Sequence record: PP777464.1
DNA: 64,000 nucleotides
Reading direction: 5' to 3' (one strand)
Numbering within the stretch: position 1 is the stretch's first letter; each line of letters opens with the position of its first letter. A program made the translations under genes and the position numbers. The notes beneath the pieces are model-generated. The model was not told the DNA's origin. It did no database searches and was given only the letters and a program-made list of their open reading frames with translations. Shown here one piece after another: positions 17,989 to 22,265 of the stretch.

Positions 17989-18104
<116 letters not shown>

Positions 18105-18108
18105 AAAT

Positions 18109-18194
<86 letters not shown>

Positions 18195-18211
18195 CAATTA
18201 AAGGTTAAACC

Positions 18212-18372
<161 letters not shown>

Positions 18373-18376
<4 letters not shown>

Positions 18377-18533
18377 CACATGAAGAATGGATGAATGACA
18401 TTAATTTTAGATATTCGGGTATCGGTAAATGGCTAAAGTATCATTGGGAATTCATTTCAGAGCCGCATCTGTATGATAAACTTATCAACGATCCAGCATA
18501 TGAAATGTACTTAATTGAACTACTGGTACGAAT

Positions 18534-18537
<4 letters not shown>
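18373..18537 (+). CDS. MTHEEW family microprotein (54 aa)
   Basis: Recent paralogue of 18212; ATGA coupling. Confidence 0.7.
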
Positions 18538-18706
<169 letters not shown>

Positions 18707-18708
18707 AG

Positions 18709-19134
<426 letters not shown>

Positions 19135-19189
19135 CTAAATAGTTCAGTACCAAGGAGATTAATATGTTTAAAGATGAACGTCCAGATTT

Positions 19190-19230
<41 letters not shown>

Positions 19231-19236
19231 GAATTC

Positions 19237-19575
19237 CACAATCAGACGTATATGGTGTAAGTTACGTCGATGCAATCCAGAACAAGATCTCTGGTACTCT
19301 AGGAAGTGGTGAATGTTAACCTAGACGGGTTTGATAATTGGACGATAGGCAATTATTACTTGACTAGCAGGTTTAAACTAGAGGTGACTATCCTTCACCA
19401 AACTGGAAAACCGGATGGACTTTTATTTAAAAGGGTAAGGCGTGGAAATATGTTTACAGTAGTTGCTTTTAGTAGCCTGTACGCCCCACGTCAAGGTAGC
19501 CGAAAGGCAAGTTAAAACGGGTGGTTATAAAGCTTAATTAACAGCGGCGTTTAAAAGCGTCACCATCCATTTTTT
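19237..19575 (+). ncRNA. candidate structured ncRNA (~330 nt)
   Basis: Own promoter, many hairpins and long-range helices, T-run end, no convincing ORF. Confidence 0.5.
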
Positions 19576-19592
19576 TAATTAAAGTTGGTGAT

Positions 19593-20412
<820 letters not shown>

Positions 20413-20425
20413 ATAGGAAATTAAA

Positions 20426-20611
20426 ATGCAACTTTTAATTCTTTCAATATTGTATATTATTATAATGGTTCCGATATCAATACGTTTAATTACAGTTGAA
20501 CGATTTTTATCGAAACATGGAAATAGATCTATGATCTTTGTACCAATCGGGTTGATATTGTTTGGTATATTTTCATTTATAATGGGAATTAACGCTACAT
20601 TCATTTCATAG
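20426..20611 (+). CDS. small membrane protein (2 TM)
   Basis: Hydrophobic; RBS AGGA. Confidence 0.7.
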   Translation: MQLLILSILYIIIMVPISIRLITVERFLSKHGNRSMIFVPIGLILFGIFSFIMGINATFIS

Positions 20612-20620
20612 GAAACAAAT

Positions 20621-20878
<258 letters not shown>

Positions 20879-20886
20879 GAATTTAA

Positions 20887-21288
20887 ATGAAAAAGAATGA
20901 CTTGATCAAAATGCTTCAAGAGATTGACGGCAATCCAGAGATTGTTATTTGGAATGGATATGTCGATGATTATATGAACATCGAAAAAGGCTTGACTAAA
21001 ATCACTCTAGTCAAAGAAACTGAACAGTTCCTTCTGGAAGCATTAGTGCACGAATGGTGCAAACGTAACAATACATTCGACATTCCAGAAGATCAACGAA
21101 CTAAGATTGCAGAACAAGCTAAAAAACTTCATAAGAAACGTGAATACGATTTCCAGAACCCACATGTTACTGAAGACGAATTCAATCACTGGTACGGTAA
21201 AAAGAAATTGACAAAATATGTCATTTCACCTAAACTACGTGGTAAGACTTCACTTGGTGTCTTCAACGCCGCTGACTTAAACTACTAG
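20887..21288 (+). CDS. hypothetical protein
   Basis: MKKNDLIKMLQ N-terminus. Confidence 0.75.
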   Translation: MKKNDLIKMLQEIDGNPEIVIWNGYVDDYMNIEKGLTKITLVKETEQFLLEALVHEWCKRNNTFDIPEDQRTKIAEQAKKLHKKREYDFQNPHVTEDEFNHWYGKKKLTKYVISPKLRGKTSLGVFNAADLNY

Positions 21289-21297
21289 CGGGTATTA

Positions 21298-21847
<550 letters not shown>

Positions 21848-21849
21848 TA

Positions 21850-22052
<203 letters not shown>

Positions 22053-22103
22053 GCCTCCCCTCAATGCGAAAGAGTATAGAGACTTGTTGGTTATCTTACT
22101 TCT

Positions 22104-22186
<83 letters not shown>

Positions 22187-22189
22187 TCA

Positions 22190-22265
<76 letters not shown>

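What the first reader, a model, noticed from the sequence alone, without database searches (positions are those of the whole stretch)
19237..19575. Promoter-driven ~330-nt structured RNA candidate in the tRNA region
Seen: directly downstream of TTGACT-N17-TGA-TATAAT. Helices include GACGTA/TACGTC, CCAGA/TCTGG, TGGTGAA/TTCACCA enclosing TAATTG/CAATTA, GGATGG(19434)/CCATCC(19562) enclosing CGTGG/CCACG, TACAG/CTGTA, a GCC-GAAA-GGC GNRA hairpin and GGCGTT/AGCGTC, then a T-run. It is GC-richer than its flanks; the only ORF (19306) has a poor RBS. Established: large ncRNAs such as GOLLD and ROOL occur near phage tRNA clusters. Inference: a novel ncRNA class; I do not recognise it.
Basis: partly seen in the sequence, partly recalled or inferred. 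Interest (0 to 1): 0.66.

Follow-up and report, generated by a model that had tools for sequence, protein, structure and literature searches.

The report
Pseudoknotted phage RNA from tRNA arrays
The flagged 330-base stretch is really two separate non-coding RNA genes plus a terminator behind one early phage promoter, and the first (about 185 bases, three pseudoknots) belongs to an undescribed RNA family that unrelated phages carry inside their tRNA gene arrays; its function is unknown.

Summary
The window is a 121Q/PBECO4-type jumbo coliphage (100% identical to phage fEgEco12). The promoter, most local helices, the raised G+C content and the T-run are real. The region is not one 330-nt RNA. 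It has three separable parts.

- **Module A (19236-19420).** A compact RNA with six hairpins and three H-type pseudoknots.
- **Module B (19439-19508).** A rod hairpin plus a GNRA hairpin.
- **Terminator (19519-19576).** A forked (Y-shaped) stem followed by a U run.

Relatives carry promoter-A-tRNA, promoter-B-terminator, or promoter-A-promoter-B-terminator.

Module A occurs once per genome in six or seven phage lineages: Asteriusvirus, Alcyoneusvirus, Bragavirus, Novosibvirus, a Stephanstirmvirinae phage, Aeromonas Emmerichvirinae and metagenomic contigs. In most it sits inside a tRNA array, starting 2-5 nt after an upstream tRNA's CCA. About 95% of pair cells are paired, against 23-47% in shifted controls, and 29 of 46 pairs change on both sides.

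ORF 19306 is not coding. No Rfam family matches, the motif pattern found no match in any bacterial genome, and I found no paper describing it.

The function is not known. My best guess is a nuclease-resistant trans-acting RNA that binds a host factor.

The parts
19202..19230 (+). Early sigma-70-type promoter: -35 at 19202-07, 17-nt spacer, TG-extended -10 at 19225-30. The predicted start is near 19236-19237.
   Evidence: Consensus scan gives 11 of 12 matches. The same 29-nt cassette, one mismatch, sits at 19961-19989 and ends 7 nt before tRNA-Ser. Equivalent promoters precede module A in L019, L020/RaK2 and EJP2.
19236..19420 (+). Module A, a pseudoknotted RNA of about 185 nt and the member of the conserved family. 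Model R1 matches 19232-19424.
   Evidence: R1 scores 212.6 bits, E 1.9e-57. Homologues appear. There is one copy per genome in five complete records.
19236..19309 (+). Pseudoknot 1: the 5' end (19236-39) pairs with the 5' side of the H3 loop (19306-09). H1 and H2 lie inside it.
   Evidence: Three pair sets occur in three lineage groups, with changes on both sides at two of the four positions.
19241..19271 (+). H1 hairpin (19241-43/19269-71 and 19245-50/19263-68) with a conserved loop motif.
   Evidence: 7 of 9 pairs change on both sides. Single-sequence folds recover it in every lineage.
19277..19294 (+). H2, a hairpin of variable length (19277-81/19290-94).
   Evidence: 4 of 5 pairs change on both sides, and stem and loop lengths differ between lineages.
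19298..19325 (+). H3 hairpin (19298-303/19320-25). Its loop holds the 3' strand of pseudoknot 1.
   Evidence: 6 of 6 pairs change on both sides and 98.5% of cells are paired.
19326..19332 (+). Junction J3/4, a nearly invariant unpaired block.
   Evidence: Alignments A4 and A8.
19333..19357 (+). H4 hairpin (19333-40/19350-57) with a conserved loop at 19341-49.
   Evidence: 5 of 8 pairs change on both sides. RNAalifold predicts it independently.
19358..19381 (+). Pseudoknot 3, a classical H-type knot: helix 19358-62/19368-72 interlaced with H5 (19364-67/19378-81).
   Evidence: Both helices are 100% paired in 16 sequences, each with 2 pairs changed on both sides. RNAalifold finds the first helix unprompted.
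19383..19420 (+). H6 hairpin (19383-87/19395-99, 7-nt loop) and pseudoknot 2 (loop 19390-93 with 3' tail 19417-20).
   Evidence: H6 is 100% paired. Pseudoknot 2 is 96.8% paired with 2 of 4 pairs changed on both sides and five pair sets. In the window its outermost pair is a mismatch. In EJP2 all four pairs are standard.
19421..19438 (+). A/U-rich linker between modules A and B. It may act as a weak stop or a processing site.
   Evidence: In RaK2 and L020 a complete promoter is inserted here. That it is a processing site is inference.
19439..19492 (+). Module B rod hairpin: outer stem 19439-45/19486-92, middle stem 19455-59/19477-81, inner stem 19462-67/19471-76.
   Evidence: Fold. Pairs are kept, with a few changes on both sides, between the window, RaK2 and Kuravirus (only 5 sequences). 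It has its own promoter in JNE01, RaK2, L020 and one RNA-library contig.
19499..19508 (+). GNRA-tetraloop hairpin of module B.
   Evidence: Present and unchanged in the window, RaK2, L020 and JNE01. It never varies, so there is no comparative support.
19519..19576 (+). Forked (Y-shaped) terminator-like module: closing stem 19519-25/19562-68, inner hairpins including 19546-51/19556-61, then a U run at 19570-76.
   Evidence: Folds. A second diverged copy directly follows tRNA-Ser in RaK2, with compensated changes in the closing stem. Termination itself was not shown, and RNA-library contigs run across it.
19306..19515 (+). ORF of 69 codons. It is not a gene.
   Evidence: In-frame stops occur in 13 of 15 homologues and substitutions are even over codon positions. 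It crosses the A/B boundary, which is split in relatives. It has no Pfam or PHROG family, unlike its neighbours.

Best explanation
The locus is an early RNA-gene cassette of a 121Q-type jumbo phage. One host-type promoter drives module A (19236-19420), then module B (19439-19508), then a forked terminator (19519-19576).

Module A is the important part. It is a single-copy member of a phage-only family of compact RNAs of about 185 nt. The RNA has six hairpins and three H-type pseudoknots, and two of the knots lock its 5' and 3' ends. In jumbo phages it is made from its own promoter. In T4-like, T5-like and other phages it is transcribed inside tRNA arrays.

Inferred steps:
- The tRNA-processing enzymes cut it out of array transcripts: a cut in the A/U spacer after the upstream CCA, RNase P at the next tRNA, then exonuclease trimming back to the knot.
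- The result is a stable, nuclease-resistant particle.

Most likely mode of action, about 0.35-0.4 on its own: it works in trans by binding and sequestering or redirecting a host macromolecule shared by Enterobacterales and Aeromonas, during takeover or counter-defence. It does not appear to depend on a phage partner protein.

Module B is a separate small RNA of about 130-140 nt, terminator included. In this phage it has lost its own promoter and rides on module A's transcript.
For: **Shown**
- Promoter.
- Modularity. EJP2 has promoter-A-tRNA-Ser. JNE01 has promoter-B-terminator. RaK2 and L020 have promoter-A-promoter-B-terminator. L019 has promoter-A-promoter.
- Family membership and one copy per genome.
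- Position in tRNA arrays, on the same strand, 2-5 nt after the CCA in PM2, SdyM006, Proteus phage 1, KP13-16, L021 and L022.
- Structure. The 5' half is 94.1% paired against 28-39% in shifted controls, with 17 of 20 pairs changed on both sides (alignment fitted to the model). The 3' half is 96.6% paired against 25-47%, with 12 of 26 (plain MAFFT alignment). Pseudoknot 1 covaries.
- Many G-U pairs fix the + strand as the RNA strand.
- Not coding.
- Phage-only: the pattern has 0 matches in 185,579 prokaryote species genomes.
- No flanking protein gene is shared across lineages.
- PM2 and the window are 92% identical over the element although their phage families are unrelated. This indicates horizontal spread of a self-sufficient element.

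**Inferred**
- Processing route, stability, action in trans and a host target.
Against: - There is no direct expression evidence. The RNA libraries were available only as assembled contigs, which show presence but not ends or levels.
- No partner or target was identified.
- Folding energy alone is not significant.
- The family is small, six or seven lineages, so some pairs rest on two or three independent changes.
- The 5'-half alignment was fitted to the model.
- The many invariant unpaired nucleotides would fit a ribozyme or a ligand pocket as well as a protein site.
- T4's analogous stable RNAs (rnaC, rnaD) still carry no functional annotation in the T4 record, so a dispensable or subtle role is possible.
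Confidence: 0.55

Rival explanations
1. Module A is a self-cleaving or otherwise catalytic RNA that helps mature polycistronic tRNA precursors, for example by freeing the 3' end of the upstream tRNA. This would be analogous to the HDV-like theta ribozymes that abut phage tRNAs.
For: It starts 2-5 nt after the CCA of an upstream tRNA in five lineages. Its very 5' end is in a pseudoknot. It has a multi-pseudoknot fold with many invariant unpaired bases. Theta ribozymes are a precedent (PMC10879173).
Against: In jumbo phages it is a stand-alone promoter-driven gene with no tRNA directly upstream. The upstream tRNAs already encode CCA, and a spacer remains. No ribozyme family in Rfam matches even at E up to 10. 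Pseudoknot 1 is only 4 bp and there is no HDV-like core.
Confidence: 0.12
2. Modules A and B form one functional RNA of about 340 nt. The separate occurrences in other phages would then be degenerate or partial versions.
For: In the window and most Asteriusvirus genomes A and B are contiguous behind one promoter and before one terminator. A GNRA loop in B could dock on A.
Against: A occurs without B in at least five other lineages and in EJP2. B occurs without A in JNE01. RaK2-type phages put a full promoter between them. The proposed A-B helix is contradicted by local pairings that covary.
Confidence: 0.1
3. Module A acts in cis as a structured spacer in RNA-gene transcripts. It would block exonucleases or guide RNase E, so protecting or ordering the maturation of neighbouring tRNAs, with no role in trans.
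For: It sits constantly inside tRNA transcription units. Both ends are knotted. L021 has tandem copies on either side of one tRNA.
Against: Simple hairpins would be enough for that job. About 60 invariant positions, most of them unpaired, and 72-93% identity across unrelated phages point to a more specific function. It also occurs as a stand-alone gene followed by another promoter (L019).
Confidence: 0.1
4. Module A is a ligand-sensing aptamer, riboswitch-like. Pseudoknot 2 next to a U run would control read-through into downstream RNA genes.
For: It has a compact pseudoknotted fold with invariant junction bases. A U run directly follows pseudoknot 2 in the stand-alone copies: window, RaK2, L019, L021b and EJP2.
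Against: Copies inside arrays have no U run after the knot. No alternative expression-platform pairing is conserved. Pseudoknot 2 has only 3-4 bp.
Confidence: 0.07
5. The conservation reflects a DNA-level or protein-coding feature: ORF 19306, a homing or recombination target, or a mobile element end.
For: Several GenBank records annotate a hypothetical protein here. The element moves between phage families. Homing endonuclease genes lie in some tRNA arrays.
Against: In-frame stops occur in 13 of 15 homologues and there is no third-position bias. There is no protein family. Compensatory changes with strand-specific G-U pairs show selection on RNA. There are no terminal repeats and no linked nuclease.
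Confidence: 0.03

Closest known systems
Phage T4 small stable RNAs rnaC and rnaD (species 1 and 2 RNAs) of the tRNA cluster
   Same: They are non-tRNA stable RNAs encoded on the same strand inside a phage tRNA cluster, directly next to tRNAs, and the T4 record gives them no function (T4 annotation). By inference they are co-transcribed and cut out by tRNA-processing enzymes.
   Different: No homology: model R1 finds nothing in the T4 tRNA region. They are 139 and 119 nt, and rnaC ends in a tRNA-like T-arm. Module A has three pseudoknots and no tRNA-like arm.
GOLLD and ROOL large structured RNAs
   Same: They are phage or prophage-associated, often near tRNA genes, have complex conserved folds and have no known function.
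   Different: They are about 500-800 nt, and cryo-EM shows RNA-only complexes (bioRxiv 10.1101/2024.12.08.627333, listed). The Rfam models do not match. Module A is about 185 nt and is found in virulent phages of gammaproteobacteria.
Theta (minimal HDV-like) ribozymes next to phage tRNAs
   Same: They are pseudoknotted RNAs placed immediately 3' of phage tRNA genes (PMC10879173).
   Different: They are minimal HDV-like ribozymes, which lack the P4 domain. Only 4.5% of their tRNAs encode CCA. They occur in gut phages of Bacteroidota and Bacillota. Module A is three times larger, follows tRNAs that encode CCA after a spacer, also exists as a stand-alone gene, and has no HDV match.
YrlA / bacterial Y-RNA-like RNAs
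   Same: They are structured non-tRNA RNAs that also turn up in phage tRNA arrays. A sub-threshold YrlA match lies in the same KP13-16 array.
   Different: YrlA has a tRNA-like domain and a Ro-binding helix. Module A has no match to that model.
Exonuclease-resistant RNAs (xrRNA) of flaviviruses
   Same: Resemblance in architecture only: the 5' end is tucked into a pseudoknot and a hairpin loop pairs with the 3' tail. This comparison is from memory and was not tested.
   Different: They have an unrelated sequence, belong to eukaryotic RNA viruses and block Xrn1. E. coli has no comparable 5'-3' exonuclease.

Membership tests
Any Rfam 15 family (GOLLD, ROOL, HDV-like and other ribozymes, RNase P, tmRNA, 6S, YrlA, group I introns, riboswitches) | Covariance-model score at or above the family's gathering threshold | tested here: not met
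   Only tRNAs reach threshold in the window. At E up to 10 on 19000-19800 there are four chance-level matches, none on the + strand inside the RNA. Nothing matches the homologues in L021 or L006.
T4 rnaC/rnaD stable RNAs | Sequence and structure homology to the T4 species 1 and 2 RNAs | tested here: not met
   Model R1 gives no match at E up to 1 in the T4 tRNA region L015. Reading the sequence shows no shared motifs.
T4 rnaC/rnaD stable RNAs | Non-tRNA gene embedded on the same strand in a phage tRNA cluster | tested here: met
New family defined here (module A) | Full-length match to model R1, with H1-H6 and three pseudoknots preserved | tested here: met
   The window scores 212.6 bits, and 15 other copies score 137-211 bits. 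Pair counts are, and pseudoknot 1.
Sigma-70-type promoter | -35 and -10 hexamers with a 16-18 nt spacer, placed to start the RNA | tested here: met
   11 of 12 matches with a TG extension. A near-identical cassette (one mismatch) lies before tRNA-Ser. Promoter activity itself was not tested.
Intrinsic (Rho-independent) terminator (19519-19576) | A stable G+C-containing stem immediately followed by a U run | tested here: inconclusive
   A 7-bp closing stem plus U7 is present and recurs after a tRNA in RaK2. The simple scan does not call it, because the stem is forked, and RNA-library contigs cross it.
Protein-coding gene (ORF 19306) | Reading frame kept open in homologues, with a codon-position substitution bias | tested here: not met
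   13 of 15 homologues have in-frame stops and substitutions are even over the three codon positions. There is no Pfam or PHROG match.
Self-cleaving ribozyme | Site-specific self-scission | not testable with these tools
   It needs an in-vitro cleavage assay. No known ribozyme model matches.

The most novel reading that the evidence does not exclude
Module A is a new functional RNA class with its own activity. It could be a new ribozyme acting on tRNA-type transcripts. It could instead be an RNA decoy that phages pass among themselves to neutralise a host factor, for example a tRNA-targeting defence nuclease or a processing RNase. In either case its tight link to tRNA arrays would reflect function and not just shared processing.
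Probability: 0.2. Interest if true: 0.85.

Novelty: new variant of a known kind. Interest (0 to 1): 0.62.

Why it matters
Non-tRNA stable RNAs in phage tRNA clusters have been known since T4's species 1 and 2 RNAs. They are still unexplained.

This family is a better handle on the problem. It has a compact fold that can be probed, with three pseudoknots supported by covariation. It is conserved and exchanged among unrelated virulent phages of Escherichia, Salmonella, Klebsiella, Proteus, Morganella, Shigella and Aeromonas. It also occurs both inside tRNA arrays and as a stand-alone early gene, and those two settings can be compared experimentally.

Complex-folded RNAs with this many invariant unpaired bases have usually turned out to be ribozymes, aptamers or specific protein ligands.

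It also corrects annotation. Several GenBank records call a hypothetical protein across this RNA.

Tried and rejected
- **Rfam.** Searches at gathering threshold and at E up to 10 found nothing relevant.
- **T4 rnaC/rnaD.** Homology rejected.
- **Pattern scans.** IMG/VR returned only sequenced isolates plus one chance match, L031, which model R1 rejected. The metagenome scan gave four useful contigs. The scan of prokaryote genomes gave none.
- **BLAST from diverged copies.** No further lineages found.
- **Own genome.** None is held for this window.
- **RNA libraries.** The runs were available only as contigs. They show presence in RNA libraries and strain variants, but not ends, levels or termination. 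The apparent joint that skips 19130-19200 is a DNA polymorphism between 21-nt repeats, not RNA processing.
- **Second full-length model.** I modelled the 5' half instead.
- **Hand-typed helix script.** I replaced it with scripts that use only coordinates and files.
- **Kuravirus non-coding region.** It shares only module B's rod. It is not a module A homologue and its fold is not significant.
- **Partner protein.** An all-against-all comparison of flanking ORFs across lineages found only translated RNA and tRNA sequence.
- **Literature.** Searches found no description of this RNA.
- **Other pairings considered and not adopted.**
  - J3/4 with the base of H2: it conflicts with H2, which covaries.
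  - A small hairpin at 19401-19412: it decays in Aeromonas copies.
  - A CsrA-like GGA site in the tail: the GGA is not conserved in Aeromonas copies.

Full report
**Source and context.** The window matches Escherichia phage fEgEco12 at 100% and other Asteriusvirus jumbo phages (121Q, PBECO4) at 96-99%. Six tRNA genes lie at 18015-22263. The finding lies between two small ORFs that have PHROG families of unknown function. In Rak2-like phages, host-type promoters cluster in the early region of short ORFs (PMC5259590).

**Observation.**
- The promoter at 19202-19230 is real by consensus: 11 of 12 matches with a TG extension.
- The same 29-nt cassette recurs at 19961-19989 and ends 7 nt before tRNA-Ser. 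This phage therefore uses it as a leaderless RNA-gene promoter.
- By the same spacing, the RNA here starts at about 19236-37.
- G+C rises to 0.385-0.41 against 0.29-0.33 in the flanks.
- Folding energy is only weakly better than shuffles: z = -2.06 overall, -0.80 for the first part and -1.99 for the second.
- No Rfam family matches.

**The region is composite.** BLAST against phage genomes splits it in two.
- The first part (to about 19420) matches, at 72-93% identity, phages of unrelated families.
- The second part matches only Asteriusvirus and Alcyoneusvirus, and its first 54 nt match Kuravirus.
- Asteriusvirus EJP2 has promoter, first part, tRNA-Ser and no second part.
- JNE01 has the same promoter directly before the second part and no first part.
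- RaK2 and metagenomic contig L020 have a complete promoter between the two parts.
- L019 has a promoter, the first part, then another promoter.
- A contig from an RNA library also shows the second part behind its own promoter.

I call the parts module A (19236-19420), module B (19439-19508) and a terminator module (19519-19576).

**Module A: distribution.**
- Bragavirus (T4-like; PM2, Pm5461, Morganella Mm5, Shigella SdyM006): A fills the gap between tRNA-Gly and tRNA-Asp.
- Novosibvirus (T5-like Proteus phages): between tRNA-Leu and tRNA-Ser.
- Klebsiella phage KP13-16 (Stephanstirmvirinae) and contig L022: after tRNA-Leu, in arrays of 13 or more tRNAs.
- Aeromonas Ishigurovirus and Ceceduovirus: between tRNA-Pro and tRNA-Thr.
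- Contig L021: two diverged copies flank tRNA-Arg.

A is always on the tRNA strand. Where a tRNA lies directly upstream, A begins 2-5 nt after the encoded CCA. Five complete genomes have exactly one copy each. The T4 tRNA region, with its rnaC and rnaD genes, has no match. A pattern of the most conserved block has no match in one genome of each of 185,579 prokaryote species, so the family appears to be phage-only. Flanking protein genes are not shared between lineages.

**Module A: structure.** Alignments of 16 copies and a model-based alignment of the 5' half give the following elements.
- H1, H2 and H3.
- A nearly invariant junction (19326-32).
- H4, with a conserved loop.
- A 5-bp helix (19358-62/19368-72) interlaced with H5 as a classical H-type pseudoknot.
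- H6.
- A pseudoknot between the H6 loop and the 3' tail.
- The 5' end (19236-39) pairs with the H3 loop (19306-09) and encloses H1 and H2.

| Region | Cells paired | Shifted controls | Pairs changed on both sides |
|---|---|---|---|
| 5' half | 94.1% | 28-39% | 17 of 20 |
| 3' half | 96.6% | 25-47% | 12 of 26 |

The 5'-half alignment was fitted to the model, so its counts lean towards that structure. In the 3' half, both pseudoknots there are among the helices with changes on both sides. Further points:
- Pseudoknot 1 shows three different pair sets in three lineage groups.
- RNAalifold finds H4, H6 and the 5-bp helix without prompting.
- Single-sequence folds recover H1 and H3 in every lineage and H2 in most.
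- Frequent G-U pairs identify the + strand as the RNA strand.

- 19395-99 pairs locally with 19383-87, not with 19308-14.
- The GGATGG block is at 19413, not 19434, and belongs to module A's tail.

**ORF 19306.** Its start codon is the 3' strand of pseudoknot 1. The frame holds stop codons in 13 of 15 homologues, including close relatives. Substitutions are spread evenly over codon positions. It spans the A/B junction, which is split in relatives, and it has no protein family. It is not a gene.

**Module B and the terminator.**
- B is a rod-like hairpin (19439-92) plus a GNRA hairpin (19499-508).
- The rod keeps its pairing, with a few compensated changes, between the window, RaK2 and Kuravirus. 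This rests on only five sequences.
- The last part is a forked stem (19519-25/19562-68, with inner hairpins) followed by U7.
- RaK2 carries a second, diverged copy of the forked stem right after a tRNA-Ser. Compensated changes in its closing stem mark it as a reusable terminator-type module.
- Termination itself is not shown.

**Expression.** Public RNA libraries that hold the sequence were available only as contigs. They show presence and strain variants but no ends or levels.

**How it most likely works.**
- Shown: gene organisation, family, fold, non-coding nature, phage restriction and horizontal spread.
- Inferred: in arrays the RNA is released by the enzymes that mature the flanking tRNAs, and the two terminal pseudoknots protect the ends, giving a stable particle.
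- It moves between unrelated phages without any linked protein gene, and it also works as a stand-alone early gene. I therefore favour, at about 0.35-0.4, a trans-acting RNA that binds a host component common to Enterobacterales and Aeromonas.
- A ribozyme, a cis-acting protective spacer and a ligand sensor remain open. The rivals section gives tests for each.

**Comparison and novelty.**
- The closest known kind is the T4 pair rnaC/rnaD: same setting, but no homology.
- GOLLD and ROOL, theta ribozymes and YrlA share context only.
- I found no paper describing this RNA. A large catalogue of short phage RNA motifs (PMC10690425) could contain fragments of it, and I could not check that.

I rate module A as a new RNA family within a known kind of system.

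Noticed in passing
window 19131-19200: A 21-nt copy of the promoter's upstream half (19131-51, repeated at 19201-21) is followed by a strong ribosome-binding site and a 9-codon mini-ORF (19164-19193). The 71 nt between the repeats are missing in some related phages and in RNA-library contigs, so this is a repeat-mediated indel polymorphism.
   Followed up: partly
window 19961-20085: A near-identical copy of the promoter cassette (one mismatch) ends 7 nt before tRNA-Ser(GCT). Individual RNA genes in this phage appear to have their own leaderless early promoters.
   Followed up: partly
window 18212-18698: Three tandem paralogous 54-codon ORFs, abutting with 4-nt overlaps. The first matches phrog_10970 (unknown function), and the second shares its first 17 residues.
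   Followed up: no
L006:473-579 (Klebsiella phage KP13-16 tRNA array): A sub-threshold match to the Y-RNA-like family YrlA (39.7 bits against gathering score 69, E 5e-6), and a second weaker one at 796-851. Another non-tRNA RNA may sit in the same array that holds module A.
   Followed up: no
L004:1563-1850 (Kuravirus phage vB-EcoP-XT32): A copy of module B's rod hairpin opens a non-coding stretch of about 300 nt. That stretch ends in a T-arm-like hairpin and an ACCA, and only a minus-strand hypothetical ORF is annotated there. The fold is not significant by energy (z -0.75), and it is not a module A homologue.
   Followed up: partly
L025:1495-1555 (RaK2 178775-178835): A second, diverged copy of the forked terminator module lies directly after tRNA-Ser and before another early promoter.
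   Followed up: yes
L021:2102-2608: Two diverged copies of module A flank a single tRNA-Arg(ACG) on a 3.2-kb metagenomic contig. This is the only tandem arrangement seen.
   Followed up: partly
L005:1743-1943 (Aeromonas phage 65 gene 65p135); 121Q gene 129; fEgEco12 and others: Deposited annotations place hypothetical proteins over module A or the A/B region. These are probably mis-calls over an RNA gene.
   Followed up: partly
L006:2120-2180 and L022:200-285: In the KP13-16 lineage, tRNA-like sequence follows directly downstream of module A. In KP13-16 it is an unannotated T-arm-like fragment. In L022 it is the tRNA-Met that ARAGORN calls at 83-158.
   Followed up: no
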